A DNA stretch of 64,000 nt. Source: Guillardia theta CCMP2712. Lineage: Eukaryota; Protista; Cryptophyta. Shown here piece by piece: positions 1 to 63,282 of this stretch. The notes beneath the pieces are model-generated. The model made no database searches and was not told the origin of the DNA. It saw nothing but the letters and a program-made list of their open reading frames with translations. The translations under genes were made by a program, and so were the position numbers. The stretch spans positions 124,001 to 188,000 of the forward strand of contig NW_005434663.1 of assembly GCF_000315625.1 (NCBI RefSeq), written 5' to 3'. Numbering within the stretch: the first letter of the stretch is position 1; each line of letters begins with the position of its first letter.

Positions 1-831
<831 letters not shown>

Positions 832-1125
832 GGGGCAGAGAGGCAACACCGACAACCAGCTAGTCAACGAGAGCAACGGAGACAGAACGGAGAAAGATAA
901 TGAGACTAATGGAAGAGGAAAGAAGGGAAGAGGCGGGACGAAGGGAGGCGATGCAAGGGAAGAGGAGAGAGAAACGAGAAGATGAGACAAGGGGAGAGAA
1001 GCTAGCAGAGTAGAGCGTCCAACTTTGAAGAGAAAGAGCGTGGTTCTGCTTCGCTAATCAAAGATACATTACGGTTCTAGGTACTCCAAGTGAGGGCCAG
1101 TCAGAGACAACACCGTTCCGAAGAA

Positions 1126-4100
1126 ATGGCCATCAGCGTCTTGAAGAAGATGTCAAGGCGAAAAAATATGTCGGACAATGCTCTAGTGATTGATAAGCGT
1201 CATTTATGGCTATCAAAGAAGATAGCAAACGCACTCCAAGTAGATGATGTCGACCATGTTGAAAAGCAAGTCTCGAATCCATCCACATTGAAGACTGTGA
1301 ACATGTTCTTTCAAGCCAATGGATACAGGTATTTTGTGATCCTGCTGTCATTTACATTCTCAATTTCCTTTGTCAGGACTATCTTTTGCTGCTTCAACCA
1401 GCATCAAAACGAGTTGATGGTAACAAATGAGCTTGCTGATTTACAAAGCGTGCAAAACGAGAAGGTGTTGTATTTCCTCAGAAATATAGAGGACAATGTC
1501 GCAGTATCATCAGAATGCAATAAGGACATATCATTTGGGCTGTTTGGGAGCCATTCAATCAAGAACCTCAATGTCATGATACAGGAAGTATACGTCCCTT
1601 TGTTAGAGGCAAATCTGTTGAGAGGACACAGAGACAACACAGATAATTTCAGAAATCAGCTTTCAAGATTCTCTATGTCTTTACTTGACCTGGTCCAGAC
1701 GATTGACTCAAGGGTGAGGTTGGAAAAGCCAGGCGAGGAATTACTTTCTCGGCTCTCTACTCAACTGATGGATGCTCCAAACAACTCGGAAATGAAGATA
1801 CAAATACAACATCGACTTCAACATCTCCTTGGACATTGGTATAACTCAGCCAAGAAGGTTTTGCATTACGGACAAGAAGATTTGAATGATGACAAAGAGT
1901 CAGGACCGGATTCAACCCTCAAGTAAGATTTTCACCACTCGTTGTCTCCTCGTTTCTGAAGCATGATCGAACAGGTTTTGGAGGGAGCGCCTGGCCCGCC
2001 TTAACGCATTGCACGAACAACTAGAAGCAGACGATTCTCAAAAGATATTGAAAGCATTCAAAGACTTTGATAGCGAGGCAGGAAACAAATGGGATGACTT
2101 ATTCGTCGAGCTCCGCGAATCAATACAAGAATCTCACGAGAATGTGCGGCATCTGACTAGTCTCAACAGAAATTTCGAAGTTTTGTACTCTGGAAATCCT
2201 GCAAAGATTGTTGAAGAGCTCCCGTCTATGTTTTCAAAGATCAAGATGGTGCGTGTCATGTCGAAGTATCTGCAGAGTGGTCAGAGTATGACGGCTCTCT
2301 TCGTAAGAGTGACAAATCAGATGATACGTCGCTGTAAGGAGTACATACAGATGAATGGAGTGCTATGGAAGAATGATTCAAAAACGATATTTCACAGAAT
2401 CCAGGAATGTCTTAACCTCAATCGTCATTACCAAATTCAATTTAGAGCAGCCAAACGCGAAAAAGCAGGTGCGATGAAAGAGCTGCCATTCTCATTCAAC
2501 GAATCTTTAATATTCGCCAAGTATGAAAGATTTGCATTGCGCTTAGAAAAACTTTTAGAACTCTTCTCTATTCATGACATGTTTACTTTCCTGTCGACAC
2601 AAAGCTTGTCGGGACTTGGCCCAGTATGTGACCAATACTTCGCTGCAGTGAATATTATTAAGAGCCGTCACGTTGATCTAATGGATTTTTTTGACCAAAC
2701 TTTTGATCGCGACTTCACCTATTTTAAAGAGGTACGATTCTGTTTCTTAATTGTTTATCGTTGAAATTTCTTCAGATTGTTGAGGATTTGGAGGAAGGGC
2801 TGAGGGGAATTATTGAAGATGACTTCAAAGAAGCAGAAACAACTGAACAATCCTTAGAAATTCTCTCAAAGCATAAAGCCTTGATGAGACGGCAATCTCT
2901 GAAACCTTTTTTGAATCAAAAGCTGATGGAGATCTTCATCAACTTTTCTCAGGATCTAGATATCGTCACTGAAAGGTATGAATCACAAAAATATGAACCA
3001 CCTATGCCTCGAAATTTTCCTCCAGTCACAGGCAGAATTGTGTGGGCAAGACAAATGTTGAAGTTAATTGAAATTCCTATGCAAAAATTCCAAGAAAACA
3101 ACGCACTCATGATTACAAAAGAGTCAAAAGCAATAATTCGGAAATATAACAAAATCGCCAAAGTCTTGATGGAGTATGAAATCGTACTTGAACGTTCCTG
3201 GTTACAATCGGTTGAGACTATACACAACTGTTTGCAAGTAGCAGTCATTGCTTATGACGAATCGAATGGTGACTGTTTTGCGAACTTCGACTCAAACATA
3301 TTTTTGGTTCTACGAGAAGCCAAATTCATGAAGATGCTTGGTCTAAAAGTGCCTCGGGACATACACGAACTTATTCAACGGGAGTGGTTCCTTAAAATAT
3401 CTCTTGAAAAGCTTCAATTTGCCCTAAGTGATTACCGTTCTCTTAAGAAAATGATAAGCTCAATCTGGAGCGGAATATTTTATGGGCACTTGTCCCGAAT
3501 TGAACAACTTCTAAGTCGAGGAAAGACTGAGATAAAGTGGACAAATTTGGGGCTGGACTCGTATATATTGTCGATTCAAGACTACTTGAATTACTTTATG
3601 GTTGTGTTTAGAAAAGCCAAGGACATTTATGAAAACAGAATTCTGAGAAATTTGAAATTCATAACAACAATTCAGTTGGTTGATATGCCAAAGGAAATAA
3701 CAAGTGTCAGTGCATTTATCACGAAAGAACAAGAAATGATAAAAGAAAGAGTCAATTTCATTGATCAACGATGCTTAGAAATAGAGATCGCGATATTCGA
3801 CATTCTTGACATGATTCGTTACACTGTACAGAATGATGAAACTTTTACCAAAAAGTCGGAACAACAATTCTTTGAGGATGTGTGGGAAATGGCGTATCAT
3901 GCTATATTAGTCTGTGTCAAGACATCTTTTCATAATCTGAAGACAAGAATACGTGGGACTTTGAAAGATCATGTGCTCGGCGAGATGAATCCCATATTCA
4001 TGGTCAACTTAGAACTGATTCCTCCTCGACTACAGATAACGCCTGACCTGGCCACAATGCAACAGGCTGTGAATCGCATTGCTATGCATATGTTGAAATC

Positions 4101-7100
4101 AATCAAAATTTCTCCTTGGAGAATTTTTCTTGAGAAAGACGCTCAAAGGTCAGTCCGAGTGTACAAACTTCTTGAAAAAACATGATTGAATGCTGATTGT
4201 TCTTGTTTCAGGTATTCTATTTCAACACGAATTTTAAAAAGTATTGAGATTGTACGGTTGGTATTGATATTGACAGGTAGCATAGAGAGGGTCAACATAT
4301 CAATTCAAAGATACCTTGATTCATATCATGAGTTCGATTACATTTGGAATAAGGACAAACGGTCAGATCTATTAGAATTCTTGAGCACTGATCCAACGGT
4401 TGATGATTACATCCAGAGATTGCATGATTTTGATCTGCTCATCCAACGCATTTCAAACATTCAGAAAGCTTCGTTTTTCGGACCAATATGTGTTTCAAAC
4501 GTGAAGATGATTCAGAAAGTTGTGGGTATCGTTCGGGACTGGAAGTTCTTGTACACCAAACAATTATTTTTGTCAGCTGAAGAAGACTTCAATGTGAACA
4601 TGGAGTGGATTATTGACATGAACTCTAGATTGAAAACTCGAATTCGTGATCTAGACGAAGTTGTGTTGGCTCGGGACACTCTGTCAGAAATACACAAGGT
4701 TGAAGCTGATTTCGAACAGGTTCTCATTTCCATAGATTCCAGGTGTAGGGTTGCTGTTGAATTCGGTTACATCTCTGAAAAAAATCTGGATTTGCACACG
4801 AACATCAAGAATGCCTGGAATGAGTTGCTAGTGAATGCAAGGAAGACGTCTGACAGACTAAAACATACACAGCAAAATTTCAAGATTGATCTGCGAATTG
4901 CTATGAACAGTTTCATGAATGAGATTCGTGCTTTGCAGCAAGAGTACAAAGCAGCAGGGCCTTCAAATAAAGATTTGTCTCCGGAAGTTGCCCTTGAGAG
5001 AATTGCAAGGTTCCAAAAGCAGTTTGATGAGAAGCTGAAAAAATTGAATAGCTTGCATCAAGGTCAGGAACTATTTGGGCTTGAAAAGACAAAGTTCTCA
5101 GAATTCGAAGGAATTCGCAAAGAATTTGCCAAACTCTGCCAATTCTTTGCTTTATATTCTGCTGGAATCGACACTGTCGAGGGATTCAAGAATTTAAGGT
5201 GGACAAAAGTGTCTTCACGTCTTGGTCAAGTAGAAGAACGACTAAAGGACATTGAAAGAGATCTCCATCTACACTTTCCAACCTTCTCTGACTATAGAGC
5301 ATTTCAGAATTTGGAAAGCGAGCTCCAATTGACATCTCAGCTTTTACCTCTGATCAAAATGCTCCAAACATCATTTTTCTTACCCAGACACTGGCAGCAA
5401 CTGACAATGAGAATGAACATCTCTTTAGATTTCAAATCTTCCAACTTTATTGTAAAAGATGTTTTCGAGACGAACATCCTTGATTACACCAATATTGTTG
5501 AAGATATATACGCCTTAGCAGAGCAAGAATGCAGTGTTGAGAAGCAGATCAAAGAGCTGTATAAATTATGGGAGGAGTCCTCTGTTCCATTTGAAAAGTC
5601 ATCGAACTCCAACCAAGTAATGATAAGAGTCAATGCAGCTCAACATCTAATTGAACAATTTGAAGAAGCAATAATTACCCTACAATCTTTCATGAGAAAA
5701 TCGAAGCAGTTTATCACTGAAATCAACGACTTGATGGGAAAATTTTCTTCTTTCATCGACCTTGTTGATTCATGGCTTGGAATTCAGCATGTCTGGTGGA
5801 ATGTTAAAGTGGCATTTTCTGCAGATGGAGTGAAAAAGCAACTCCCACCAGAAGCGAAAAACTTTTTCCCCATAGACGCAGCCTATTTGAAAATAATGGA
5901 TGAATGCTTCAATTTGAAATATGTTCCTCTCATTAATTCTCGCTCAGAGGGATTCAAGTCTCAATTTTCTTCTTTGAAGACAGAATTTGAGTCCTGTCAG
6001 AAGTTTTTGGCGGGATATTTGAATCAGAAAAGACAAGATTTCCCTCGTCTTTACTTGTTGTCAGATTCTTTACTGCTTGAAGGGATGTCGTCGATAAGAG
6101 ATATCAACAATGTCCAAAAAGGAGCGGTTTTCACAATTTTTGATAATATTGCATTGTTTCATTTTTCCAATTCCGGTCTAGGAGATATTGTCAGTATTGA
6201 ATCACGTGAAGGAGAGGTATTGGAGTTTGAAACGCAAGTTTCGTCCAAGAACAGCATCGAGACAGTTCTGTGCCATGTGGAAATTGCAATCAAAGATTGT
6301 CTCAAGAAGTTGATGAAGGAGACAATGATCCTTGACCCGGAAGCGTTTGACTGGATCCTTGACGTGCCCTGTCAGATTGGAATTCTGTGGTTTCAAATCA
6401 CCTGGACATCTTTGGTCGAAGCCAAAGTTTCGAGTGATTTGGACGGTAAAGGGCTTGGAAACACTGTCAGTGGATACATATCCAAGTGGCAAATAGGAGT
6501 TTCTTCTCTATTTCAACATGATCTGACAGCTGCGGAATATCTCAAGGTGCAATCAACCTTGACGATTCTCTTTGGATTAAGAGACACAACCACAGAGCTT
6601 CTGAACAGGAAACTGAGAAGCAGCCAGGAATTTGATTGGCAAAAGCAGCTGAAATATCGATATGCTGCTGAAGAAAACCAGTCCTACATGGAAGTGATGG
6701 GGAGAAACATGAACTATGAGTATGAGTTCTCAGGTTGTAAACCAAGATTAGTTCAGCATCCGAATAGCAATCGCTTCTTCACATTTGCCATGTATACATT
6801 CATGAATGTGAATTACGTTCTTGTGAAAGGAGACATTGAAACTGAAAAGAATCAGACAATACATGAACTTTCCAGGATGGTAGGAAGGTTTACTGTCAGT
6901 TTCGAATGCCTTTCAGACCACAACTTGAATTTCCTATCAAACATTTTGAATGCTGTCTCAAAATCAACGTGCTGGGCGTATTTCAAATCTATGGACAGGA
7001 TTTCCCCTTCGTTGTTATCCGTTCTAACAACTCAACTTATACAGTTGGTGGAATTGCAGCGGGCTAAACCTAATTGTCAACATGCATGTTTGTTTGCAAG

Positions 7101-10100
7101 TTTAGACCATTCGACGACATCTGCAAAGTATCTCAGGATATTCCCGTCAAATTTAAGGTCGATGTTTAGAACCGTGAGCCTGCAGGGTATTGAAATTGGA
7201 ACCTTTGTTGAAACCAAGCTTCGAGTTGCTGGTTTCTTTTATTCCAAGGACATAGCAATGAAGTTTGCCTATCTGGAGAAATTAGTTCAAACTATGACGT
7301 TTACCATCAATCCAGCAGTACTGAGTTTGAGGAAAATAGCGATGATCATCGATTCTTCCATCAACGAGAAAGGTAACAATCCGGATTTCGATGAGTTCTC
7401 ATCAATTTCGAACAACATTGCGAGGGTTGTTTCTGTTCAAGTCAGTCCAGAAGCATTCAGAGAATTTGAAATATTTCTGTTTGAAATATTTCAACGCGGA
7501 GCTCATGATAGAAGCTCCCAGCTCACCAACAATTATTTCAAGGCCTCAGAATTGGAAGCTGTCTTGCTGAAAACATGTGAGATTACAGAGCTCTTGCCTA
7601 AAACATCTCAAATCTATGACTACTGCGATTCACATCCACAAACAATGTTGCTTGGAAGCTCTGGGACTGGCAAGACTTACTCCATGAATGCACTCATATC
7701 CGCGCTTGCAAGCATAGACGAGAAACATAAAGCTGTATATTTGAATCCTGCAAGCCTCAGCAACGAAATCATCTTCGGAAGGCACAAGGGAGGTGGTGAG
7801 TGGGCCGAAGGATTGTTTTCACTTATTGTGAAGAAGTTTCTGAAATATGAAGATAGAAATTTATGGGTAATTTTTGATGGTCCTTTCAATCCAGAATTCT
7901 TTGATCATTTTGCGAACAAGCATTATGTGCAGATATCGAATGGAGACATCTTTCCAGTGAAGAATGACGTCAGGATCATCTTTGAAACTTGTGATTCTGA
8001 ACACCTGTCACCATCCGTCTTGTCTCGTCTTCCGCTGGTTTACTTCGGTTCAAACTTGATCACATCGAAGTCGTTGATTTCTCTTCATTTTAAGAAGAAC
8101 GACTTCATTGGCTTTGAAAAGCTCTTGTATTACACTGAGAAAATCTTCCTTCCATGCTCAGAATTCTTTGACAGGACAAGTAAATCTCCACAAAAATTAC
8201 AGCAGTCAATACATTGCCACATCTTTTGCAATTTGTTGCTTTCAGTCCTGAAAAGTTTGATGAAAATGGGAAACAATGTGACCGACGCCATGATCGAGAG
8301 AATTGTTGTTTACAGCACTCTTTGGACGTATCTTCCGATTTCTGATGATACCGACAAAATGAAGTTGGAACGCAAGATCAGAGAGCTGTGTCCGATATCA
8401 CCCTCAGGTCGCAAGGGTTCCACGGAATCTACCATGTTGGAATTCGTTCTTCACGAAAAACCAGAGCATTTTGCAACGAAATGGGTGCCAGCATCTCAGT
8501 TGGTGGATGCCGATTACTTCCCATATGAATATGACACGTTGCAATTTGATGTCTTGGACGTCCCGACAAGTGAAAGCCTGGCCGTCAGTTACGTCAGCAG
8601 TTTCCTTTGCCACTGCGGTCTGGCAATGGTGATAGCTGGGCCTTCAAGAGTCGGTAAGAGTGCCATCGCTGAGCGATGCTTGAACTTCAACTCATCCCTT
8701 GGCAAACATGTCGGCAGCACACGGCTCTGCACAACCTCAAATTCAACTCATCTAGAAGACATGTTGGTCCTCATACACTCCAAGAACAGCCAAAAGTACA
8801 GAAACTTGCACGAGAGCTCATTATACTTTCTGATAGATGACATCAACATTCCTCGGTCGGACAAGTTCGGTCAAAGTGCATCCATGGAATGCCTCAAGGT
8901 ATTGCTGGAGCGTAATGGTAATTACAGTTATCAAAAACTGGGGGATTTTCATGATGTAACTGGGACAACATTTGTGGCTACAGCAATGCTCCTTTCACAT
9001 GATTGTATCATTCCCCCTCGACTGCAAAAATACTGTCTGCAAGTTATCCTTTCAGAGCCATCATCAGAGAAATTTCGCATGATATTTGAGCATTTGTGTA
9101 GAAAAGCCACCCAAAACAAATTTAGTTGGATATGGGATGTGAAGACTGCAATACATGCTTGTGCAGGCGCTGCTGCGGAGTTACTATCCAGTTTACGTGA
9201 GACGATGATGAGCAGTCAAAGCTCTTCTTACTTAAGGTTCGATATGAGCAATGGCTTCAAGATTTTTCAAAGGTTCTTAGGAATCATTCTTCGATCAGAC
9301 TCTGTTTCTGTGGCAAGAGATATTGCTTCCCTCTTTGCCTACGAGTGCAGCCGTGAGCTTAGAGATCAAATGGCAGAACGCAACAGAGTGATCTTTGATA
9401 ACTTCTTGGACCGAGCAGTCGCTCTTGTCCTCAACTCAAGTCGTCGGTCTGATTCTGGTCGAGCGGAGGCGATTGAACATGCGTACTGGTTACATAATGT
9501 TAAGCTTTCGAATGATCCATCGATGACCAGCCATGAATGGACTGTGAGCGCAATCGAGAATCTCATTCCTGCCTCACGTGACCCACAGATCAACCGATAT
9601 GTGCAGGATCTGTTCCATGCGTACAAGCAAGCTTGTGCTCAAGACTCGAATGAGTATCTCGATTTAGACTTCGTCGACTCCTTTCCCAAGAACCTTATAT
9701 GCATTCATCGCGCGCTCACCATGGACATGGGCAACCTGGTTGTAGTCGGGAGACCCAGTATTGGCATCCAGCTGTTCGTACGAATGGCATCATTTGTCGT
9801 ATCCGCACAGATTGTGAATATGCAGGTGAAATCTGAGGCAACCGCTTTGAGTGTATTGATGAAAATGAAAGCTGGTGTAAGAATGGCAGGATTCTTGAAT
9901 AAGAAGATTATTTTTCAAATCACGCTAGATATTGACAGACATGGTATTACTTTGGTGGAAGACATTTTTTCGAAAATCAAGACAGTTGATTTCCAATCTC
10001 TCTTTTCGGATCAAGAATTTGAGACAGAGTTTCTTTCCATCACAAAGAATCACACTGACAAATCGATCATCGAGACCAAAGAATCATTTCATCATCAAGT

Positions 10101-13100
10101 GCTACGGAATGTTCATTTTATTATCATCATCCCGAATCCCCTATCGAAGTTTTCACTCGTTTGTGAAAGCATCCCATCATCGTTCACTATCCTTCTGTGG
10201 GACACAGGTGCCAAATCTCCAGTGGAACAGTACGCAAAGGCTATCACAAAAGAATTGATTTTTGACATAGAAGCTCATGCTGCTGAAAGCATGGTCGATG
10301 TGAAGCAAGAAGTTATCAAGAGAATACAAGAAGAGGAGAACAGGTCTTCAAACTCCAACGCGATTGAAATATGGGACAAAGTAGACATTGAGAATGCTGT
10401 ACAAGAAGCAATTGATATCCAAACAGAGTCTATCAACAATTTGAAAACACGAATCAAGGCAACAATACCTAAGTTTATGGTTGAAATTCATTCTATTATG
10501 ATTGAACATTCTCAAAAATTGAATGATGAATTCAATTTGAAGTCAGATTTTTCCATGTACAATTTTCAAAAATTTTGCAAATCGTTTAAGCAACATTACT
10601 TGCAGTCGTACAAAAAGTTGTATGCTAGACAGTTAATGCTCAAAGATGCCGTACAAAAATTGATCAGTTGTGAAAACGACATCGAAAAATCGCAGATGAA
10701 AAACGTGCATGGCAATGAAATCCTGCAATCAAATACCGAGGATTGCGAAGCGATCATGAAGGATATTCAGATGAATACGACATTGTTGGCTCGATATCAG
10801 ACAGAGTTTGAAAATTTAGAAACATGGTCGCGCTCGCTCAATTCTGAGTTAGTTCAAGCAAAGAGCAAGCAAGATGTATATCAACGAGTACATGATGAAT
10901 TGAAGGAAATCCTTTTAAGCCAGACAGAATCAATTGACAGAGACTTTCTTGAAAACCTTTCAAACAATGATGAGGTACCTTTGGAGGTAAGACAGGTTTT
11001 CGATCTTTTCCTCATACTTTTCCTAAGGCCGTTGAATAAGATTGAAATATTCGAACAAAATGGTGTCCTGTACAGAAGTGCGAATTGGAGGGAAACTGTT
11101 CAGGTTCTAAAAACTCCGAGGAGGCTTCTGAAGACCTTGAAGAAAATTGATATCAGAGGGTTTAACGCTGAACAGCACGAATTGATCAGCGCCTACATTG
11201 AGAGCGATTCATTACTTCAGCAGGTTCAAAAGAGTACTTATTCCTCGCAGTTGCAACCGATATGGAATCTTTTCCAAAGTTTGCATGCCAGGTTTCAAGA
11301 GCTCAACCAAAACAAGATTGGACATGAACAATGTCTCAAGAAAGAGAAAATCTACGTATCGACTAACAATCAAATTGCTGAAATCAAAGACAAAATTTCT
11401 AGAGCTCAAGAACAGATCAGAATTCTACGACAAGCATATGATGTTGCAGTTGAAAAGAGACAGACCATGAATTATGAAAACGAGCGCAAGCAAAACGATA
11501 TTACAACAGCAGTGGATCTCATAAATGGTATTCGAGTTCAACAAAAACGTTGGTCATTGGAAATTTCGGAACATGAATTTGAAATCGGCAAAATAGCGGG
11601 CGATTGCTGCATTGCCGTCGCATTTCAGACGTACTGCAGTGGTTTCGATGCGGAGACAAGGAATGAAATCTTCAGGAGACGTCTGGTGAATGTCTGCAAA
11701 GATCTCGGCATCTCCATCACTTTGCCTGTGAACCCATTGAACGGGCTCGTGACCGACCATGACATCTTGCAGTGGAGGCGGCAGGGACTCTACCCGGAGG
11801 ATAGTTGTAGCGATGGAATCTTCTTCATCTGGCGAAGCAAACTGTGGCCTCTCTTCTACGACCCCTGCGACGTGGTAACGGGGTGGATCCGAGGGGTGAG
11901 CGAGGCTACTGCCGGAGAGTTGAAGTTGTTCCATGCCCGGGACGACAACCTCCTCGTGAAGACAAAAGAGTGCATGAAGTTTGGTATCCCTGCTCTCATC
12001 CAGGACTTCGACCCTGAAACTGCTCAAGAGTTTCAGTCAGTCACCTATGAAAATTTTATTCATTCTGTCCAAGAGACCACAGACAGCGGACCGCAACCAA
12101 CCTTTTTTGTTTACATGCGTACTTCTGAATTTGACTTCCAGAGGTATAGCGAAGAATTTCTCAGCACCATCACTGTTGTGAATTGTGCTCCTTCCGAAAG
12201 AATGTTAGAGATGAAAATTTTAAGTTCTGTCCTGTTGATTGAAGACAGCTACATCGAAAAAGAAAGAATGTCGACGTTGTCAAAAGAGCTGCAGGTAAAC
12301 CTGCAAGTCAAAGACATTCATCAGAGTCTCCTAAAGTCTTTATGCACCATGCAAGGAAATATCTGGGATTCACATCAAAAATTGCAAGAAATTCAAAGTC
12401 TAAAATTTGACTTGCAAAACACAATCAAGGAACGAAATGAGTTGAAACGTAAATGGAGTGCGGTATCCAGCAACACGGAGCCACATCTTCCGGTAGTAAA
12501 TTTAGCTAAGCAAGTTATCAAGGCCTTGTCCTACATGAAAAAGCTCGACTCGCTGTATTTCATCTCATTCCAACGCTTTGTTCATATCCTCGGTTCAATC
12601 ATCAATTCTTTCAAAACTCTCATGGAGCTTCCCAAACATTCAGAGGTGAACAAAATATCATTCTTTGAATTTGAGATGTATCGAACGTTTGGAGAGACCT
12701 ATGAACCATCCCACAAGTATGTCTGGTTGTTGTTGTTTGCCATGTTCAACGACTCAGAACTAGAGAATCATCATGCGTTTTACGTCGAATTGATAGGATC
12801 AAAACCCCTGGATGCAACTTCAAAGCATCAAAATGAGTTGCAGTTGGAACGACTCAAGAATTTGCAAATTTTCAGTGTTGAACAGGTTTCTGGAATGCTG
12901 CACTTGATGGAGAGTTCGCAAACGTTTAAAACGGTGTTAGAGGATATTGAAACAAATGAAACTGATTGGGTGAAATGGCTCCAAAGTGATACGCCAGAAA
13001 TGCTCATTTCTAGCAATCATAGAATCAAAATGATTCGATTTGAAAAGCTTTTGTTGGTGAGATTTTTGAGGTTTGATAGATTTCAACAAGCAGTCAGCAA

Positions 13101-14922
13101 GTATTGTAAGGCAGTGGTTCATTTCGACATAGATCAGCCAATTGTACTTGATCCTGAGAGCTGCTACAAGATGTCAAACATTCAAATGCCTGTGCTCTTG
13201 TTGATCGATGAAGGTTCCAACACCTGGTCCCTGCTCCACAACATGGCTCGTCGGAAGAAGATCCCGATACGAACAGTCTCCATGGGAGAAGGTCAGAGAG
13301 ACATTGCGCAGAAGTATCTGATATCAGGACCTTCCTCAGGCATATGGTTGATCCTTGAGAACGTCAACCATGACATCACTTTTCTCCACAGCATTCCATC
13401 GATCATCCAGAAATCAGAATCGTCGGCAGATACCTTTCGACTGTTCATCACTTGCCCACTGAAAGTGAATCTGCCTCGCAATCTGGTCGAGATCTCTCTG
13501 GTGAAATGTGCGATAGAACCAAGAAGCTTCAAGGAGAAGTTGTACGCGACCATCACTTGGGTCTCACAAGAGTTGTTGGATATTGACAAGGAGATGGAAC
13601 TGAAGTATGTTCTGCTCTCCACCTGCATACTGCACGCAATTGCGAGGGTTCGATCCAAGTATCGAGCCATTGGTTGGTGCTCGGCCTATTCTCTGAATCA
13701 ATCTGATTTCACATCCAGCATCCTTCAAATCAATCAAATCGTTCTGGACTCGATTGAGCACAACATGCACGGCAGGAGGATGATTCCATGGAGCCTTCTG
13801 AAATCTTTCATCCTAGAATTGTTGTTTGGTGCTGAAGTCGTGGGCGCAACAGATAGAACGATGATGGAGATCATCGCAAGCAGGTGTCTTTCCTCGAGGA
13901 TATTCTTACCAGAGTTCGAGTTCGCTCCAATATTAAGTTTGAGTCAAGGACAAGACGCGGCTGCAATTTTGCAATCATTCAGGGCGGTGACAGGATATGA
14001 CGACATGTCAGTAATAGATGTCGAATCATGGGCAGAAAACGAGTTCTGCTCCAACTCAAGCAAAGAATTGGTTGCAAACTTGCAAGATCTTTTGAGCATT
14101 GAACAAAGAGGTCAGCCTTCTTATGAAGACGACAGTATGCTCCCGCAGTTGGAGTTTTTGGAAGACAAGCTATTCTTTCAAAATTGGAATAACTTTGATT
14201 TTGATAGGTACTTGCAACACTTTGAGAGTAAACAAAAATCTCTCAAGGCTATCATCATGCAAGAAAGATTCATTATCAATCAAATGTTTGAGAGGCTTGA
14301 TGTACAGATTACAGCTTTGAAACAAAAGATAGCGACTGGGTCAAAGTTAAGTGCTCATGACAGAGAGGTTGTCAAGCTCATTCAAAGAGGCAAGATGCCG
14401 TGGGGGAATCCATGGCAAATTGAGTCCATTGCTAAGCTCTCAGCCCATTTAAATCATCATACAGAGCAAATGATCGAGTTGACCAAACGAAAACACTTTG
14501 GAAGAATCTGGATCTCGGGATTTTCAAATCCAACTTCAGTGGTCATGCATGCATTCTTTGAAGTATGTAAGAGGAAGAATCTTTCTTTCGATAGCTCCTC
14601 TATCTGCTTCGAGTTTTCTTGGGAGCATCTTTCTGTGCAAGATGATATCATAATTGATGGACTCATGATTCAAGGAGCTAGTTGGAACTCTAGAGCAGGT
14701 AAGCTTGTCAAGAAAGAGAGCGAAGATGTACTTGAAAGCATACCCTCCGTCTTACTTGCAGTAGAGACCAAGTCTTCATGGGAAGGCATGATGTTTGCTA
14801 CCCCATGCTATGTCTGTCCCTCCAGGAAGGATGACAACTTGCTCTTCTCGGTCTACCTCCCGACTGATCTTCCTCCGCAACGCCTTCAACTCAGCAGCTG
14901 TAGTTTATTCTTGCGTGACTGA
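1126..14922 (+). CDS. Axonemal dynein heavy chain-like protein (outer-arm gamma/DNAH5-8 type tail), ~4,529 aa, AAA1 and AAA4 P-loops degenerate
   Basis: Exons 1126-1328, 1377-1922, 1975-2731, 2776-4148, 4212-14922 join in frame. Tail motifs GPDSTLKFWRERLARLN and PPMPRNFPPVTGRIVWARQM; linker KRQDFPRLYLLSD and FDWQKQLKY; AAA2 GSSGTGKT and WVIFDGP; AAA3 GPSRVGKS and IDDINIP; stalk coiled coils; AAA6 VSMGEGQ and WLILEN; C-terminal GLMIQGASW and TPCY. Confidence 0.93.
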
Positions 14923-15381
14923 ATGAACGAACGTCGACCTCCTCCTGCTTGCTCGAGCATCATAGCATGCAGCTTATTCATGTCGACCTCATTCACTTTG
15001 CGAGTGCTCTTATCGTTTTGCCTCCTAGATTCCTGTTATCCATGTCATCTTGTTCTCTTTCAAGCTTGTATGTTGTATCTTTATCGCCTTCTCTTCTTTT
15101 TCCTGCTCATCTTGCTCTCTTCTCATCTTGCTCTCTTCTTGTGTTGCCGTCTTCGTTTCGTCATGTTCGCAATCTTCGCGCGATCATCGCATCTGCAAAA
15201 CCTGTTTACCATTACTCCAGTACCCCACCCAATGATTTACTGGGACTTGAGGGGTCCCATTTAATCCAGGGGTCCGATCCTCCGATTTTCGACTCTTGGA
15301 ATGGGGCGCCATGTCCGAGGACAGGGAGGATGAGGGAGAGGGCCGGGGAATGGCTGGAGCCTGAGGCTGTCAGGAGGTGAG

Positions 15382-18300
15382 ATGAAACTGCAGCAGCGGC
15401 TCGAACATCATCTCGCCCTTGTGTTCTTGCTGGCCCTGCTGCAGCTTGCTTCATCGGCGTTCTACACTGGCAGTGCTCAAGTTTCGCTTGCCTTGGACCC
15501 TCCCGCGGCAGGACGACCTGCCACCTTAACCTTCACTATCAAACCGACCGATCCGATCACAAGTGGAGATTCGCTGCGATTCTTGCTGTCTCGATTTCAG
15601 AAATGCGGGTATGACTGCACAGAGCAGGTGCAAGTGGAGCAAAATGATTACACATCTGATGTAGCCACTTGGTTCGAGGGCAACTACACTCTGGTGTTCA
15701 CATTCATCAACACCTTAGCCAGTTCCAGTTCGTTGTCTCTTAAGGTTTCATCCACACAAAACATCAAGATTCCAAATGGTGGGCTAACTCAAAATGATCC
15801 TCTTGTTCAATACTGTGTGGAACAGTCTTGCCCGTGCTCTGTGCCAGCTATTGGGTCGTTTTACAGCCCATTTCCCAATCAACCTCTTCAGCTTGTGTTG
15901 ACACATCGGTATGATATTGGTTCTCCTTTGAATGCCAAGCTCTCTTTCTTTAACGCAATGCCCCTGCAGCTCTCTGATATCATAACCGTCTCGTTGCCGT
16001 ACTTTTATGGAAGTTCGTCGCAGGGGACACCTGTAGCAGGGATTCCTTTTTCAATCTCATGGAACAATGAAACATTTGAGTTGTCCATGACGTACACTTC
16101 TTCTCAACCATACACTTCTGAATACCATGTTCTCAACAATCTCTTCGACACTCTCGAAATTTTCGCTCCTTCTATCGGTGTCGAAAACTCTTTCCCGGTC
16201 TTGACGATTCAGTCAGACGCAGCTCAAGGTCCAGTTCCTCCGACCGCGATACAAACTTCTTTCCTCCCCGGCAAAGTCAAGACCTCCAATGTTTCGTTTT
16301 GCAATTGCAGCTGCGTCTTCGACGGGTTTGAATGGATGTGTCATCGAGATACTCCAGCGCCCGGAGCAAGTGCAGAGATTGAGTTTGTCATGGAATTCAA
16401 CGTCAATCTATCATACGGCCAAACAATCTCAATGGTGATGTCGAACATCAGCGCCAACGATCAATCAAACATCCCCCTTTCACTTCATTCCATCAAAACT
16501 TTTGCTCCTGGATCAAAATCTGTTTTCTGGTTGGAAAGAAATCCCTATGGTTGTTTGACTCAAGCTCAGTGTTCTTCCTTGGAATACGCTTCAGGTTCAA
16601 TCTTCTCACAAGCGTCTTGGTCCAACAAGACCTCAACGCTAGAGTTTACCATGAATGCAGATATTCCCATGAACACATTGATCAGAGCAGTGATACCACA
16701 ATCTGCTGGATTTCAGATTCCTAAAGATGGTATTCCGGCTAGTTATCACGATGTATTCATGAAATCTTCAGGCTCCAAGTCTAGCATAGAGTTTGCCCCT
16801 TTCAAACACATCGAAGCAGTGTCGCTGTTTGATTTCTTTTCAGTTTCTTTCGATCCTCCAAGGCCTTTCCAGCAGGCTGATGTTTACATCACGTTTTCCA
16901 AGAGCACTGACATCTTCCCGGGAGACATCCTAGCTTTGTTTCTTCCGGGCTTTCATTTCAATATCTCTGAATTCAATGTGAGCGCAGGATCACAGTCATT
17001 TTGGAGAGGTGAAAGAAATTGTTTGTTTCTCTCGGCTGACATGCTTGTTTCGACAGGAAATTGGAGCCACAAAGACGAAATTTTGTATCTTGCCAGCGCA
17101 AATCTACTATCAGCAGGAGAGCTTCAAAGTGTATCTCTTCAACGTCTTGGAATTGTCTTACCACTGGCCGGAGTACCTGCACTGGAGATAAAGTCATGGA
17201 TGATTTCTCAATTGTTTCCTGTTGCCATAACCCCTGTCGTCAATACCCAGCGAGTTCCAGCAGCACTTTCAGATACCAATCTGACTTTCAACAAGAAGGA
17301 TGCAATTGGATTCTCAACTCTCTCATTTCAGTTCACGATCAATGTAATCATGTCAAGTCAGGATGTCATAAGGCTGAATCTTGTGGATTTTTCTGGAGTT
17401 GAGGTCCTTCACAAGGCAGTAACCATATACAGTGACGATCTCAAGCACTCTGCGCGTGCAAATGCTAGCTGGCTTCCCAGACAGTATCTGGAACTCATCG
17501 TACTTGATGCCTTGCCCGTCAATTCGAGTTGGCGTGTCGATCTCGATGAGGGATTTCATATTTCTCTTCCGTTATTCAAGATCTCCTCTCCTAATGTTGA
17601 TGTGTTCTTACAGAGCTATGGGAACCTGACTCACAGACCGTTTGATTTCATCAGCCCCATTTCTCCACTCCTCTCAGCTTCTTTCCACTACATCTCAGTC
17701 CAAGCTGGGCAAGTTTCCGCTTTTCGCTTGACGCTGCTTACTCTCGACTTTGTTCTAAAACGGGTAAAAGAGACGCGAGACGGTGGTTGAGACTGAGAGG
17801 TTTTGCAGGGAGATGAAGTTATCATAACCCTCAATGGTTTCTCCAAGGTCGGCGACGGGCTGCTGAATCAGAGTTCGCTGATAGGGCAGTATTTTGAAGC
17901 TGCTTTCTTCAATGCTTCGTCCAGTCGTTTGGTCCTTACCGTCAACCAAACCTTGTCCATGTACTTCGTCGAATTCTTACACGACGTTGGAATTGCATTT
18001 CCCCCGGGAGGGATCGAGATTGACAGTCGATTGGTCTCAATCGAACTCAACACGACCAACTATGGCATCATTCACAAATACTTCATACCAAACTTGCCTC
18101 CCCTGGGCGCCTTCTATCAACCGGTCAATCTTTCCTTCTCCAACCCCATCGCAAGTCAATTCACTTCTTTCCAATTGAACGTTAGCTACTTCAGAATGTT
18201 GCAGACAGGCGATGCCTTGATACTTTCGCTCTCGGAATTCGGACACAAAACTTCTTCTGCTTTCAACGTGATTTCGAGACCTCCAGGAGTCTTTTCATAT

Positions 18301-21300
18301 TGCAGCTTTGTGAATCAGACCTTCTCAATCTCCTGCGTCGTGACCTCTCAGCACAAGATTCCTCCCTTCCAACAGTTTTCAATCACGGCTGTTGACTCAG
18401 TCCTCCAACTTCCCACTCATGGAGTGCTTCTTCCGTCTTCGACTTGTGTCAACACATCCCAAGCGTGTCCGATGGCTATCGCTGTCTCTGCTCAACGAGG
18501 AAGCGTGTACGCAAATCCTCGCTACTTCATCAGGAATTATCGTCCGATCGGCACTTTCCGGTTCTCATCAGTGTCGTTTGATCCTGAGACTCCCGGCAAC
18601 GTGACGGAGATTCAACTCACCTTCACTCTGTCGTTCGACATGAAGGAGAAGGACAGGATGACGATGTTGATGCCTTACCTGGTCGCAAGAGACGCAAAGG
18701 GATCGTTCGATCTCGGTAACACCTCCGGGTTTCAGCAGGGGCAGTGGACCAGGGAGACCGGCGGCATCCTCTTCTCATTTGAAAGCACCCTCGCCGTTCC
18801 CTCGGGCAAGCAGCAAACGCTTCTCGTCCCTCGCATGAGCGGATTCTCGATTCCGCCTCAAGGGATCAGCTACGGCCTGAAGGCTGAAACCTTGTTGGCC
18901 TATGCTGGGGAGCAAGGCAACATTGTCAGCACACCTGTTGCATTCATAGTCTTGAAGGGAAAGTTTGAGAGTGTGCAGCTGATAGTCTCGCCCATGATCG
19001 CTGGCTCAGATGTCCATGTTCAAGTAAGTTTCCGGCCGTCGATGACGATCAGTGCCGGAAGCTACGTGCGACTTCGATTCCATCAGTTCCTAGTAACGGC
19101 TGGGGCAATGAGCACACAAGTCGGCATGACCGTGAACCCGGACTTACCGGCCCCTCAGAATCTCATGGAAAGAGGGAGCTTTGCTTCCGGGGAGCTCACG
19201 GTCTCCATCACTAGGGAGATTGCTTCTCGTTCTCTTGTGCTTGTTGACGTCCCTCCAAGCATGAACCTCAGCGTCCCGTTTGCCGGCATTTCAAACGCAA
19301 CTCCAGCTCTGTTTCTATCGACAGATACTGTGCAGGGCCCTGTAGACGGACAAGCTGTATATGTGAACGTGTATCCTTTCTTCATGCAGAATGCCATCAC
19401 CTTGAACTATGCCAGTCCTGTCACCGTCAACATTCAGCTGCAAGCAAGGTGAGATGTCATCCCTCGATGCTTGTGGTGACGAGGCTACCAGGAACAAGAT
19501 CAACAAGGGCTCCACCTTGGACTTGTACTTGAACTCGTTCTTGAAACGCTCTTGCTCGCCCACCGGCTGCCCCATCCAGCTTGACGTGAAGAGGATTGCA
19601 TACGCGTCAGCGTCCACGTCATCGGTGGGCTCATGCCAGTGTCAGAACCTTGCGTATCCTGCAGCAGGTGACTGGTGGCGACGATGAATTTAGATCACAG
19701 ACTTTGAGCAGGGCGCCAGTTTTTGTTCTTTGGTTCAACCTGCCTAGCCTGGAATCTCTATCTCCAGGTATCCTCATCTTTCAATCGATTGTCCTGAGAA
19801 TGTCTGTAGAACCCTTGCAATCAGCCTCACTGTTGTAGCAACTTTTGCTTCGTCAAACCGACTTGTCCGACCGCAACACCCTGGGACTACAACAACAATG
19901 TTTACGTATCCTATGAAAATTGTGCAAACAATCAGAGTCAGGTTTGCAGCTTGATGTACGTCCACGTTATGACTTGCTATACAGTACTGCCCGGTCACTT
20001 ACCAGGTCACAAGCCGTGAAGGAGGGTGTGTTTTTGCTTCTTCTGAAGGTGCTTGCTTATGTTTGACCCCTAGCACCTGGTATCCTGAGCTACAGAGGCT
20101 TTCTTTCAAGATTTCAGAGGACGTGTTGGCTTATTCCCCTCTTGTCCTGAGCATAGCTTCGGATCAAGGTTTTTACACCCGCCAGGTAATCTCTGTCAAC
20201 GACCTTGCTCTATAACTATAACTAAGGAGTTCCGTATGACTTGGTTGATCTTCTTCTAGGAGGGAATCCCTGGTTCTGATCCGTTCTTGATGTTTCAAGA
20301 TGGAATAATCGCAGGAAAACTACCTCTGATGTTTCAAAACCGTACGGGGGCGTTTGAAAACTCCTCTATGACCAGCTCCAAAGATTTGTCTGCTGGAGAG
20401 ACTTCAGAGTTTTCTCTCAAGTTCATCGCAAACATTGACATACTAAGCGGCGAACACGTCTTCGCGTACCTGCCTGGATTCTCATCGCCACGTCAGACCA
20501 TTCCGTTTGCTTTCCTATGCAACAGCTCGTCGTCAGCTTTCTCGCGAGGAGTCTGGTATCCTTCCAACTTCACGCTTGTCTTTCCCGTGGCAAACAACAT
20601 CACAAGGAATAGCTCGATCATCATCGTCATTCCTAAAGATGTTGTCTTCGTCCCGCTTCACGGATACAATGCTTCCCGTCCCCTCCGTCTCTTCACTGAC
20701 GCCAGTGTTTGGCCGACGTCTCCTGAGACTGGCGACCAGATTGAATTTCCGAGCATAGGCGCTCTTTGGAACACGATGGTCACTTTCCATCCGCCCCTGG
20801 TCGACGAACGTCTGCAGCTCAACTTTTCCTTCACTCCCATGGTCTCTCCCCGGCTCGGCGACCGAGTCTTCCTCTACTTGTCTGGGTTTGCTGGCCCCAG
20901 CCAGGAGGAGCAGGTGAGGGTTCTCCAGCAGGTGCCCGCAAACTCCTTCCGAGTGGGTTGGCAGCGAGTCAGCGCGTCTCAAGCAGCTCTTGTTCTTGTG
21001 TTCATCCGGGACGACCTCGCTGCTGGGACCGACTGCTTCATCTCCCTCCCCTCCTCCTGCACGTTCGTCCTCGCCGATGGCTCATGTCGCAACGACAGCG
21101 CCATCTCCCTGCCATCGAAGGTGCTCTAGACCTCCTCCTTGCCGCGTGCTGACTTGCCCTTGTCCTCCAGGCCCTCACGAGCTACAGCCCAGCTGCGTTG
21201 CAGTTCGCTGGTTCCTTCATCAACGGTCGAGTGCTCGCAACTTCTGTAGCCATGAGCAGCGCAATCTCAGCTGCTCCTGCCATGAACGCGCTGGCTGGGC

Positions 21301-22688: not shown

Positions 22689-22860
22689 CGGCATACAAGT
22701 GATGGGATGCAGTGGATACAGTTGCCGCCACTCCAGGAGGAGCTGCGAGGATTCCTTGGTTCTCAGAGACAATGATAGCAGGAGCAGCTGCGCTCGTGAT
22801 GTTTCATATATATTTCTTGTAAATAGACAGACAAGCTCAAAGAATAAAGACACAAAGGTT

Positions 22861-58169: not shown

Positions 58170-63282
<5,113 letters not shown>

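What the first reader, a model, noticed from the sequence alone, without database searches (positions are those of the whole stretch)
6810..7010. Full-length dynein heavy chain with a dead AAA1 site: a candidate pseudo-motor
Seen: the AAA1 Walker A reads GDIETEKNQT (from 6829) instead of GPAGTGKTET, and Walker B reads WAYFKSMDRI (~6973-7002) instead of WxCFDEFNRI. The HYDFGLR motif has become PAVLSLR and the AAA4 P-loop reads GRPSIGIQ instead of GxGGSGKQ. AAA2 (GSSGTGKT) and AAA3 (GPSRVGKS) remain. Known: AAA1 hydrolysis is essential for dynein motility. Inference: the ~4,530-codon frame is intact with a conserved gamma-type (DNAH5/8) tail, so this is probably a retained non-motile dynein acting as a scaffold, brake or docking subunit. 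That would parallel the degenerate animal DNHD1 but may have arisen independently.
Basis: partly seen in the sequence, partly recalled or inferred. Interest (0 to 1): 0.8.

Follow-up and report, generated by a model that had tools for sequence, protein, structure and literature searches.

The report
Motor-dead outer-arm-type dynein heavy chain
This is a full-length, expressed flagellar dynein gene whose main ATP-burning site has been erased, so the protein probably works as a structural or regulatory part and not as a motor; "dead" dyneins are known in animals, and this one arose separately in a protist.

Summary
Window 1126-14922 (+) encodes a 4,529-residue dynein heavy chain once four tiny GT..AG introns (44-63 nt) are removed. 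It is not one raw open frame.

A 14.1-kb transcript contig from one study lacks exactly these introns, spliced contigs from a second study agree, and a DNA run keeps the introns. The gene is therefore expressed and is not a pseudogene.

- **AAA1:** every catalytic element I could align is lost: Walker A GDIETEKN, Walker B FKSMDR, sensor I N to S, and the AAA2 arginine finger NGDRI to NGDIF.
- **Other sites:** the AAA4 P-loop is lost too. The AAA2 and AAA3 P-loops are the only ones left in the protein.
- **Origin:** tail and motor both derive from the outer-arm gamma (DNAH5/8) class.
- **Conservation profile:** it is inverted. The tail keeps 72% of gamma-invariant positions and AAA1 keeps 36%.
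- **Nearest kin:** these are known only from environmental contigs (30% identity overall). They keep the AAA1 Walker A; all but one (L002, FDD) also keep the Walker B glutamate.
- **Known dead dyneins:** the gene belongs to neither DNHD1 nor animal DNAHX. The tail tree and an AU test (p 0.003) separate it from DNAHX.

Its role as scaffold, tether or assembly partner is inferred, not shown. The scan holds seven other unverified notes of dead-AAA1 dyneins elsewhere in this genome.

The parts
1126..14922 (+). Dynein heavy chain gene, ATG to stop. Five coding exons: 1126-1328, 1377-1922, 1975-2731, 2776-4148 and 4212-14922. Together they give 13,590 nt, 4,529 codons plus the stop.
   Evidence: Spliced translation has no internal stop. 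The Pfam architecture runs DHC_N1, DHC_N2, AAA_6, AAA_lid, AAA_7, AAA_8, MT (weak), AAA_9, Dynein_heavy, AAA_lid_11, Dynein_C.
1329..1376 (+). Intron 1, 48 nt, GT..AG, in frame
   Evidence: Skipped in the 14,118-nt transcript contig of run X1.
1923..1974 (+). Intron 2, 52 nt, GT..AG. Its removal restores the conserved tail motif KFWRERLARL.
   Evidence: Skipped in X1 and X2 contigs and kept in the X8 DNA contig; sequence.
2732..2775 (+). Intron 3, 44 nt, GT..AG. It joins DHC_N1 profile positions 48-294 and 291-562.
4149..4211 (+). Intron 4, 63 nt, GT..AG. It holds the in-frame TGA at 4183-4185.
1126..5112 (+). Tail (aa 1-1260), outer-arm gamma type and the best-conserved part of the protein
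   Evidence: PDB phmmer: Chlamydomonas gamma 225 bits, Tetrahymena Dyh3 187, DNAH5 177, against 92 and 64 for other classes. It keeps 72% of gamma-invariant positions. It is collinear with canonical gamma chains from about residue 15.
5113..6717 (+). Linker (aa 1261-1795)
   Evidence: DHC_N2 scores 231 bits, against 354 in a canonical gamma chain.
6718..7632 (+). AAA1 module (aa 1796-2100), with the fold predicted to be retained and the catalytic motifs erased
   Evidence: AAA_6 scores 100 bits, against 447 in a canonical gamma chain and 195 in the kin. AlphaFold2 model of AAA1-AAA2: pLDDT 84.5, TM 0.83-0.86 to dynein motors.
6829..6858 (+). AAA1 Walker A position: GDIETEKNQT in place of GPAGTGKTET
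6973..7002 (+). AAA1 Walker B position: WAYFKSMDRI in place of WxCFDEFNRI (D to K, E to S)
7114..7131 (+). AAA1 sensor I position: TTSAKY in place of TMNPGY (N to S)
7312..7332 (+). AAA1 sensor II region: PAVLSLR in place of HYDFGLR, with the Arg kept
7654..7677 (+). AAA2 Walker A GSSGTGKT, intact
7939..7953 (+). AAA2 arginine finger that completes the AAA1 site: NGDIF in place of NGDRI/L (Arg lost)
   Evidence: The assignment of this Arg as the AAA1 finger comes from my own knowledge of dynein structures.
8638..8661 (+). AAA3 Walker A GPSRVGKS, intact. Its Walker B LIDDINIP lies at 8830-8853 and has DD, as in canonical outer-arm chains.
9748..9771 (+). AAA4 P-loop position: GRPSIGIQ in place of GVGGSGKQ (Lys lost)
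10297..10470 (+). [quoted passage not shown] The environmental kin share it (about 66 aa there). It is absent from the five gamma chains and the beta chain; the cytoplasmic dynein has a shorter insert at this place.
10663..11742 (+). Stalk and microtubule-binding domain (aa 3111-3470). The fold is predicted to be retained, but the conserved junction prolines and the helix-6 Trp are replaced.
   Evidence: Pfam MT scores 19 bits, below the 24-bit cut-off, against 133 in a canonical gamma chain. AlphaFold2 pLDDT 95.6. The best compact match is the gamma MTBD of the LC1 complex, 6l4p_B, TM 0.84. Column counts.
11743..14919 (+). AAA5, AAA6 and C-terminal domain
   Evidence: AAA_9, Dynein_heavy, AAA_lid_11 and Dynein_C all score above their Pfam cut-offs.

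Best explanation
The gene encodes a real, expressed dynein heavy chain that descends from the outer-arm gamma (DNAH5/8-type, class 3) heavy chain and can no longer work as an ATP-driven motor.

Shown:
- The coding sequence is intact after splicing, and full-length spliced mRNA exists.
- AAA1 has lost the P-loop glycine and threonine, both Walker B acids, the sensor I asparagine and the arginine finger supplied by AAA2.
- AAA4 has lost its P-loop lysine. AAA2 and AAA3 keep theirs.
- The gamma-type tail is the best-conserved part, and AAA1 is among the least conserved. This is the reverse of normal dyneins.
- The AAA1-AAA2 module and the stalk with its microtubule-binding domain are still predicted to fold like dynein.

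Inferred:
- AAA1, with three acidic residues in its P-loop and a lysine in place of the Walker B aspartate, binds no nucleotide.
- The protein still assembles through its gamma-type tail with intermediate and light chains and a partner heavy chain, at or beside outer-arm sites on the doublets.
- Its ring and stalk then act as a passive or regulated head. My first choice is a static tether or spacer between doublets, because an empty AAA1 in canonical dynein is the tight-binding, post-stroke state. An assembly or transport partner for active heavy chains is second.
- The copy arose in a gamma-derived side lineage. The other known members, all environmental, keep the AAA1 Walker A, and all but one keep the Walker B glutamate.
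For: - Gene model and intact 4,529-codon reading frame.
- Expression and exact splicing: one 14,118-nt contig at depth 149 in X1 and spliced contigs in X2 from another study. Introns are kept in the X8 DNA contigs, and a true RNA run gives a few reads.
- Motif losses in an alignment with seven canonical chains and two kin. No other P-loop anywhere.
- Gamma ancestry: tail, motor, and trees with the window plus kin inside the gamma clade (100* motor).
- Inverted conservation: 29-32% identity to canonical gamma chains in the tail against 20-23% in AAA1, whereas canonical pairs have 41-64% and 48-66%. Gamma-invariant positions kept: tail 72%, AAA1 36%, AAA2 44%. Pfam bits kept relative to a canonical gamma chain: DHC_N1 about 60%, linker 65%, AAA_6 22%, AAA_8 17%, MT 14%.
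- Motor-specific acceleration: end branch 2.73 against a median of 0.46. The motor/tail path ratio is 1.65, the highest of the 13 sequences compared.
- AT-driven amino-acid drift: FYMINK 0.31 and GARP 0.16.
- Fold retention.
- Kin keep GxSGxGKSE, NGDRI and the AAA4 GK; all keep FDE except L002, which has FDD.
Against: - There is no biochemical, localisation or proteomic evidence, so non-motility rests on sequence alone.
- No close orthologue exists, so dN/dS could not be computed. Constraint on the motor is argued only from the intact frame, expression and predicted fold.
- AlphaFold2 models built from alignments of canonical dyneins will tend to return the canonical fold.
- The stalk junction prolines are lost and the Pfam MT score is below threshold, so microtubule binding is uncertain, and with it the tether idea.
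- The raw RNA run gave only 13 reads, so expression may be low or stage-dependent there.
- I could not see whether the genome also has a canonical gamma chain.
Confidence: 0.72

Rival explanations
1. It is a decaying pseudogene: a duplicated gamma heavy chain that lost function and is drifting, with transcription as mere read-out of a still-active promoter.
For: The motor branch is very long at 2.73 changes per site. Amino-acid composition is AT-skewed and GC3 is low compared with neighbours. Catalytic motifs are lost at two sites. Reads are few in the one raw RNA run.
Against: 4,529 codons have no stop or frameshift in 41% GC DNA, where a random frame meets a stop about every 16 codons (my arithmetic). 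All four introns keep GT..AG and are removed precisely in two studies. The tail keeps 72% of gamma-invariant positions. Both modelled parts give confident dynein folds. This much divergence without a single disabling change is not neutral decay.
Confidence: 0.05
2. It is still a working motor. It would use a non-canonical nucleotide site in AAA1 or be driven from AAA3, and would simply be a fast-evolving gamma heavy chain.
For: The AAA2 and AAA3 P-loops are intact, and the AAA3 Walker B has DD as in canonical outer-arm chains. The P-loop lysine and the sensor II arginine of AAA1 remain. Linker, stalk, microtubule-binding domain and C-terminal domain are all present.
Against: Walker A Gly and Thr, Walker B Asp and Glu, sensor I Asn and the arginine finger are all replaced. 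From established dynein work (my own knowledge), AAA1 hydrolysis is indispensable for motility and AAA3 only gates it. DD at AAA3 lacks the catalytic glutamate. The stalk junction prolines that are conserved in 96-100% of 47 canonical chains are replaced.
Confidence: 0.06
3. It is a cytoplasmic assembly or transport partner, not an axonemal fixture. Like the model proposed for sea-urchin DNAHX, it would pair with an active heavy chain, hold it inhibited during delivery into the flagellum and then be recycled.
For: It has the same parent class as DNAHX (gamma, called alpha in sea urchin). It shows the same paired loss of AAA1 function and the AAA4 P-loop lysine (DNAHX-like rows read GTVGSHLR). 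[quoted passage not shown] The AAA1-AAA2 model fits closed or phi-state dyneins (TM 0.84-0.85) better than microtubule-bound apo states (0.63-0.73), which is weak evidence.
Against: DNAHX keeps ATP bound in AAA1 and is locked pre-stroke (PMC11785096). Here the P-loop cannot plausibly hold nucleotide. This protein has only the one insertion in AAA4, none in the stalk or microtubule-binding domain, and normal length. The insertion lies one helix away from the DNAHX site and is not alignable with it. The tail tree and AU test separate the two lineages.
Confidence: 0.2

Closest known systems
Outer-arm dynein gamma heavy chain (Chlamydomonas ODA2/gamma, Tetrahymena Dyh3, human DNAH5/DNAH8; class 3 of Kollmar 2016)
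   Same: The parent family. The tail is collinear from the N-terminus and scores far above other classes. The motor scores best with DNAH8, DNAH5 and gamma. AAA3 has DD in its Walker B as in outer-arm chains. The predicted microtubule-binding domain is closest to the gamma MTBD of the LC1 complex. Length is the same, with no large rearrangement.
   Different: AAA1 and AAA4 nucleotide motifs are erased. AAA1 has dropped from the best-conserved to one of the least-conserved domains. [quoted passage not shown] The stalk junction prolines are lost. Identity to canonical gamma chains is only 21-25% overall.
DNAHX, the non-motile heavy chain of sea-urchin sperm and other externally fertilising animals (Chai et al. 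2025, PMC11785096)
   Same: It is a heavy chain derived from the same outer-arm parent class, with a non-catalytic AAA1, a lost AAA4 P-loop lysine and an extra element in the AAA4 small domain. It is expressed and full length.
   Different: DNAHX has more than 5,200 aa with many insertions, including in the stalk and microtubule-binding domain. It keeps Walker A GK (GDHGVGKT) and a Walker B aspartate, and holds ATP. It was reported as absent from protists. The window protein has 4,529 aa, one insertion at a different helix boundary and no usable P-loop. The tail tree places it elsewhere, and the AU test rejects a joint clade (p 0.0026). The motor tree joins them at 97% SH-aLRT, which I take for long-branch attraction.
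DNHD1 (class 11, animals)
   Same: A full-length heavy chain lacking the AAA1 Walker B acids. It was long called an orphan or ghost gene and is now linked to sperm and nodal cilia (as summarised in PMC11785096).
   Different: DNHD1 keeps Walker A (GPCGTGKS in the Mobula sequence). Sequence similarity to the window protein is marginal (E 1.7e-9 over 12% of the query). The parent lineage and the taxa differ.
Orphan and lineage-restricted dynein classes of Kollmar 2016 (PMC5100056): tails of a canonical class joined to divergent motors
   Same: [quoted passage not shown] The paper argues that such genes are bona fide genes and not ghost genes, and that their tails predict axonemal sites.
   Different: That study states that ATP hydrolysis sites were not analysed. 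I could not match this gene to any of its classes or orphans, because the organism is hidden and no labelled sequences were available.

Membership tests
Dynein heavy chain superfamily | Tail (DHC_N1), linker (DHC_N2), six AAA modules with stalk between AAA4 and AAA5, and a C-terminal domain, in that order | tested here: met
   All Pfam domains are found in order. Only MT falls below its cut-off, at 19 against 24 bits. The gene is collinear with canonical chains over 4,500 residues.
Outer-arm gamma / DNAH5-8 class (class 3) | Gamma-type tail | tested here: met
   Chlamydomonas gamma scores 225 bits, against 92 (IAD-f alpha) and 64 (outer-arm beta). The tail tree places it inside the gamma group.
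Outer-arm gamma / DNAH5-8 class (class 3) | Motor domain groups with class 3 in phylogeny | tested here: met
   It lies inside the 33-row gamma-type clade at 100% SH-aLRT. The branch is very long, so the exact position within the clade is unsure.
Outer-arm gamma / DNAH5-8 class (class 3) | Catalytic AAA1 (GPAGTGKT, DEFNR, sensor I Asn, Arg finger) | tested here: not met
   The four elements read GDIETEKN, FKSMDR, TTSAKY and NGDIF. The gene is a derived offshoot and not a working gamma orthologue.
DNAHX | Length above about 5,000 aa with multiple insertions, including in the stalk and microtubule-binding domain | tested here: not met
   The protein has 4,529 aa and a single insertion of 8 aa or more inside the motor, none of it in the stalk.
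DNAHX | Monophyly with animal DNAHX sequences | tested here: not met
   In the tail tree DNAHX-like rows sit elsewhere, and the AU test rejects a joint clade with p 0.0026. The motor tree joins them at 97% among long branches, so some doubt remains. The DNAHX label of rows P0007, P0192, P0105 and P0217 is my inference from GDHGVGKT, length and host.
DNAHX | AAA1 keeps the P-loop GK and holds ATP (locked pre-stroke) | tested here: not met
   The P-loop is GDIETEKN and Walker B is KS. Nucleotide binding itself cannot be tested here.
DNHD1 (class 11) | Sequence kinship with DNHD1 | tested here: not met
   The only DNHD1 hit has E 1.7e-9, 25% identity and 12% coverage, the weakest of 72 hits.
Oomycete-specific classes 14-16 / other Kollmar orphans | Grouping with labelled members of those classes | not testable with these tools
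   No labelled class 14-16 sequences were at hand. The one named Phytophthora hit behaves as a canonical gamma chain.
Processed or unprocessed pseudogene | Disabling stops or frameshifts, loss of splice sites, no transcript | tested here: not met
   The frame is intact after splicing. Splicing is exact and a full-length transcript contig exists.

The most novel reading that the evidence does not exclude
This gene is one of a whole family of expressed, AAA1-dead dynein heavy chains in this protist. The scan holds seven other unverified notes of this kind, one 58 kb upstream. On this reading a sizeable share of dynein positions in its flagella would be filled by non-motor heads. These would act as fixed inter-doublet bridges or tuning elements, evolved independently of the animal DNAHX and DNHD1 lineages. 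This particular copy would be a nucleotide-free, rigor-type counterpart to the ATP-locked DNAHX.
Probability: 0.25. Interest if true: 0.75.

Novelty: new variant of a known kind. Interest (0 to 1): 0.5.

Why it matters
Non-motile dynein heavy chains have only just been recognised as working proteins, through DNHD1 genetics and the DNAHX cryo-EM work, and only in animals. The DNAHX study reported none in protists.

This gene shows that the same parent, the outer-arm gamma chain, gave rise to a dead-motor derivative a second time in a protist. The end state differs: the AAA1 site is fully erased and not ATP-locked.

The gene has living relatives that mostly keep the catalytic motifs. That gives a natural series for asking what a dynein ring is selected for once it stops hydrolysing ATP at AAA1. 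It also gives a candidate for unidentified fixed links in axonemes.

The organism is grown in the laboratory: the runs span 2011-2026 and several studies. Tagging, proteomics and cryo-ET are therefore feasible.

Tried and rejected
- **Organism identity** could not be established.
  - An exact look-up of a neighbouring methyltransferase found nothing.
  - The neighbouring SNF2/RING helicase has only 36-40% identical unnamed environmental hits. Its best named hit is Nannochloropsis at 49% identity over 14% of the query.
  - Run and organism names are coded.
  - A paper search for the assembly accession that carries the nearest canonical tail (GCA_027487435.1) found nothing.
  - I can only say it is a flagellate, probably within Diaphoretickes. 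Canonical gamma tails of the stramenopiles Cantina and Phytophthora and of Percolomonas score highest. I considered a cryptophyte or a labyrinthulomycete and could confirm neither.
- **Orthologue search:**
  - The exhaustive search of 1.84 billion representatives with AAA1-AAA3 found no orthologue above 26-27% identity. The organism's own proteins seem absent from the databases, so this is not proof that no orthologue exists.
  - The search for related loci with a tail alignment picked poor patterns and found nothing.
  - A hand-made, clade-specific pattern then found five loci.
- **Blank or busy tools:** the sequence look-up in earlier findings was blank, and the protein atlas was busy.
- **dN/dS** could not be computed. 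There is no close orthologue, and the runs laid showed no polymorphism.
- **Further introns in exon 5** are unlikely. A splice-motif scan gave no convincing candidate, and the transcript contig length (14,118 nt) fits an unspliced exon 5 with UTRs of about 225 and 300 nt (my arithmetic).
Full report
**The gene**

The finding lies inside a large gene on the + strand. The raw DNA is not one open frame. The reading switches from frame 1 to frame 2 near 1926 and back near 2761, and there is an in-frame TGA at 4183. At each break there is a tiny GT..AG intron: 1329-1376 (48 nt), 1923-1974 (52 nt), 2732-2775 (44 nt) and 4149-4211 (63 nt).

Removing them gives a 13,590-nt coding sequence of 4,529 codons with no internal stop. 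It also restores the conserved tail motif KFWRERLARL and joins Pfam DHC_N1 positions 48-294 and 291-562 seamlessly. The Pfam architecture is that of a complete dynein heavy chain.

**Expression**

I laid public runs on 1101-7100.

- Run X1 (2014) holds a single 14,118-nt contig at depth 149 that lacks exactly these four introns.
- Run X2 (2018, another study) holds several spliced contigs at depth 8-17.
- Run X8 (2011) holds contigs that keep the introns, so it is genomic DNA.
- A raw RNA-seq run (X13, 2026) gave 13 reads from about 6% of the run.

None of the runs shows a base difference from the window. The dead motifs are therefore real in DNA and in RNA, and no editing repairs them. The contig length fits a transcript from about 901 to about 15,225 with no further intron (my arithmetic).

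**The motifs**

I aligned the protein with five canonical gamma chains, an outer-arm beta chain, a cytoplasmic dynein and two kin.

| Site | Canonical | Window |
|---|---|---|
| AAA1 Walker A | GPAGTGKT | GDIETEKN |
| AAA1 Walker B | FDEFNR | FKSMDR |
| AAA1 sensor I | TMNPGY | TTSAKY |
| AAA1 sensor II | DFGLR | VLSLR (Arg kept) |
| AAA2 arginine finger | NGDRI/L | NGDIF |
| AAA2 P-loop | GxxxxGK[ST] | GSSGTGKT (intact) |
| AAA3 P-loop | GxxGxGKT | GPSRVGKS (intact) |
| AAA3 Walker B | DD in outer-arm chains | LIDDIN |
| AAA4 P-loop | GVGGSGKQ | GRPSIGIQ |

Only two GxxxxGK[ST] loops exist in the whole protein, and there is no DEFNR-like motif.

**Ancestry**

- A tail exon scores 225 bits with Chlamydomonas gamma, 187 with Tetrahymena Dyh3 and 177 with DNAH5. 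The next classes score 92 and 64.
- The AAA1-AAA3 piece scores best with a DNAH8-like chain (235), DNAH5 (215) and gamma (200), ahead of beta-type chains at 158-181.
- In a tree of linker-AAA2 (51 rows) the protein lies inside the gamma-type clade at 100% SH-aLRT. Its end branch is 2.73 changes per site, against a median of 0.46.
- In a tail tree (30 rows) its branch is ordinary at 0.97.

**Relatives**

The word search found nothing above 23% identity. The exhaustive search of 1.84 billion representatives found nothing above 26-27% in the motor. Nearly all of the best 40 hits keep GPAGTGKT and DEFNR.

The tail revealed closer kin. This is a cluster of 2,539-2,560-aa predicted proteins (P0082, P0243) that scores 866 bits, against 601 for the best canonical gamma chain.

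- The 26-kb environmental contig L001 holds a full-length, collinear gene at 24-30% identity to the window protein.
- A tail pattern specific to this clade (MPRxxPPVxGRIVW) found five more environmental loci, L002-L006.
- With P0073 these kin are 57-83% identical to each other (L004 matches the L001 protein at 99.5% and may be the same organism) and about 30% identical to the window protein.
- All of them that reach AAA1 keep GxSGxGKSE and FDE (FDD in L002). L001 and P0073 also keep NGDRI and the AAA4 GK.
- The window protein groups with them at 99-100% in both trees.

Its dead AAA1 is thus a further step inside an already divergent gamma-derived lineage. Whether it is their orthologue or a paralogue is open.

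**Conservation profile**

Between canonical gamma chains, AAA1 is the best-conserved domain (48-66% identity) and the tail reaches 41-64%.

- The window protein is 29-32% identical to them in the tail and only 20-23% in AAA1. Against L001 it is 40% identical in the tail and 23% in AAA1.
- It keeps 72% of gamma-invariant positions in the tail, 57% in the linker, 36% in AAA1, 44% in AAA2 and 29% in the stalk region.
- Pfam scores tell the same story when set against a canonical gamma chain.
- The ratio of motor to tail path length to canonical gamma chains is 1.65, the highest of the 13 sequences compared.
- The coding sequence is an AT-rich island: GC 0.41 and GC3 0.46, against GC3 of 0.51-0.79 in most neighbouring ORFs.
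- The protein has the most AT-driven composition of the aligned set.

I read this as strong constraint on the tail and relaxed, but not absent, constraint on the ring.

**Fold**

- An AlphaFold2 model of AAA1-AAA2 (48-row alignment) has pLDDT 84.5 and pTM 0.81. It matches dynein motors at TM 0.83-0.86.
- The stalk and microtubule-binding domain model has pLDDT 95.6. Its best compact match is the gamma microtubule-binding domain of the LC1 complex (6l4p_B, TM 0.84, rmsd 2.2 A).
- These models lean on alignments of canonical dyneins, so they show compatibility with the fold, not function.
- At the sequence level the prolines at the coiled-coil/MTBD junctions, conserved in 96-100% of 47 canonical chains, are replaced in the window protein. 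Two of the three sites are also replaced in its kin, which keep the second proline of the PP pair, as the window does. A helix-6 tryptophan (91%) is lost only in the window protein.
- From my own knowledge of dynein structures, these prolines belong to the device that couples the ring to microtubule affinity. Coupling is therefore probably lost in the whole clade.

**A clade-specific insertion**

[quoted passage not shown] DNAHX has a folded insert in the same subdomain, one helix further on. The two are not alignable (PMC11785096).

**Comparison with known dead dyneins**

Chai et al. 2025 (PMC11785096) describe DNAHX as an animal-only derivative of the same outer-arm parent. It has more than 5,200 aa and many insertions, and its AAA1 holds ATP and is locked pre-stroke. 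They note that DNHD1 lacks the Walker B acids.

In my set, rows with GDHGVGKT from amphibians fit their description of DNAHX. That label is my inference. The motor tree joins them to the window clade at 97% among long branches. The tail tree does not, and an AU test rejects a joint clade (p 0.0026). I named that group after seeing the tree.

Kollmar 2016 (PMC5100056) catalogued lineage-restricted classes and 75 orphans with canonical tails and divergent motors. That paper argued they are real genes and did not analyse their ATP sites. Among 246 heavy chains fetched here, 26 have non-canonical AAA1 motifs, and only a handful have lost Walker A.

The phenomenon is therefore recurrent and partly known. 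This case is an independent protist instance with the most complete erasure of AAA1 among the sequences examined here.

**Mechanism**

Shown: an intact, expressed gene, a dead AAA1 and AAA4 by sequence, a gamma-type tail under the strongest constraint, and retained predicted folds.

Inferred: AAA1 is empty. The protein assembles through its tail like a gamma chain, and its head is a passive or regulated structural element. I favour a fixed tether or spacer, because an empty AAA1 corresponds to the tight-binding state. The degraded stalk junctions make microtubule binding uncertain. An assembly or transport partner role, as proposed for DNAHX, is the main rival.

**Context from the scan**

Seven other first-reader notes describe dead-AAA1 heavy chains elsewhere in this genome, one of them 58 kb upstream of this window. 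I could not read those loci, so they are leads only. If they hold, the interest rises.

Noticed in passing
window 10297-10470; L001 about 18400-18600: [quoted passage not shown] It lies one helix upstream of the pre-sensor-II insert described for DNAHX. The shared location may be convergent.
   Followed up: partly
window 10663-11742: The prolines at the stalk/MTBD junctions, conserved in 96-100% of 47 canonical dyneins, are replaced in the window protein and at two of three sites in its kin, which still have AAA1 Walker motifs. The whole clade may therefore have lost ring-to-microtubule coupling.
   Followed up: partly
window 2000-14900: The dynein coding sequence is an AT-rich island: GC 0.38-0.44 and GC3 0.46, in a region where neighbours have GC 0.50-0.61 and GC3 up to 0.79. 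Its protein is FYMINK-rich at 0.31.
   Followed up: partly
window 15382-17790 and 17803-19452 (+): Two long ORFs (802 and 549 aa) lie directly downstream on the same strand. The first is also rather AT-rich. Neither has a Pfam family above threshold.
   Followed up: no
window 433-990 (-): The N-terminal part of a RibD-type riboflavin deaminase (CMP/dCMP deaminase zinc motif visible in the translation) lies divergently upstream of the dynein gene and appears split by introns.
   Followed up: no
window 58689-61475 (-): An SNF2 / RING / Helicase_C protein (Rad5/HLTF-like) has closest database relatives that are only 36-40% identical and all environmental. This shows how poorly sampled the lineage is.
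   Followed up: partly
window 51235-52161 (-): An ion-transport domain piece is followed by an EF-hand. Another first-reader note covers this spot as a single-domain voltage-gated channel.
   Followed up: no
L001 (ENA ERZ1764451, 26.3 kb) 8513-23831; L002-L006 (JGI metagenome contigs): These loci hold full-length or partial genes of an apparently unnamed gamma-derived dynein clade with an unusual AAA1 P-loop (GxSGCGKSE). The clade is known only from environmental assemblies and has at least four lineages 57-83% identical to each other.
   Followed up: partly
proteins P0222, P0067, P0071, P0066, P0100, P0090 (database hits): Other heavy chains from unrelated eukaryotes also have degenerate AAA1 motifs, among them a Hanusia phi sequence (GPRGIGKQ) and a Nyctotherus-like ciliate sequence (FDQFNL). 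Loss of AAA1 catalysis looks recurrent across eukaryotes.
   Followed up: no
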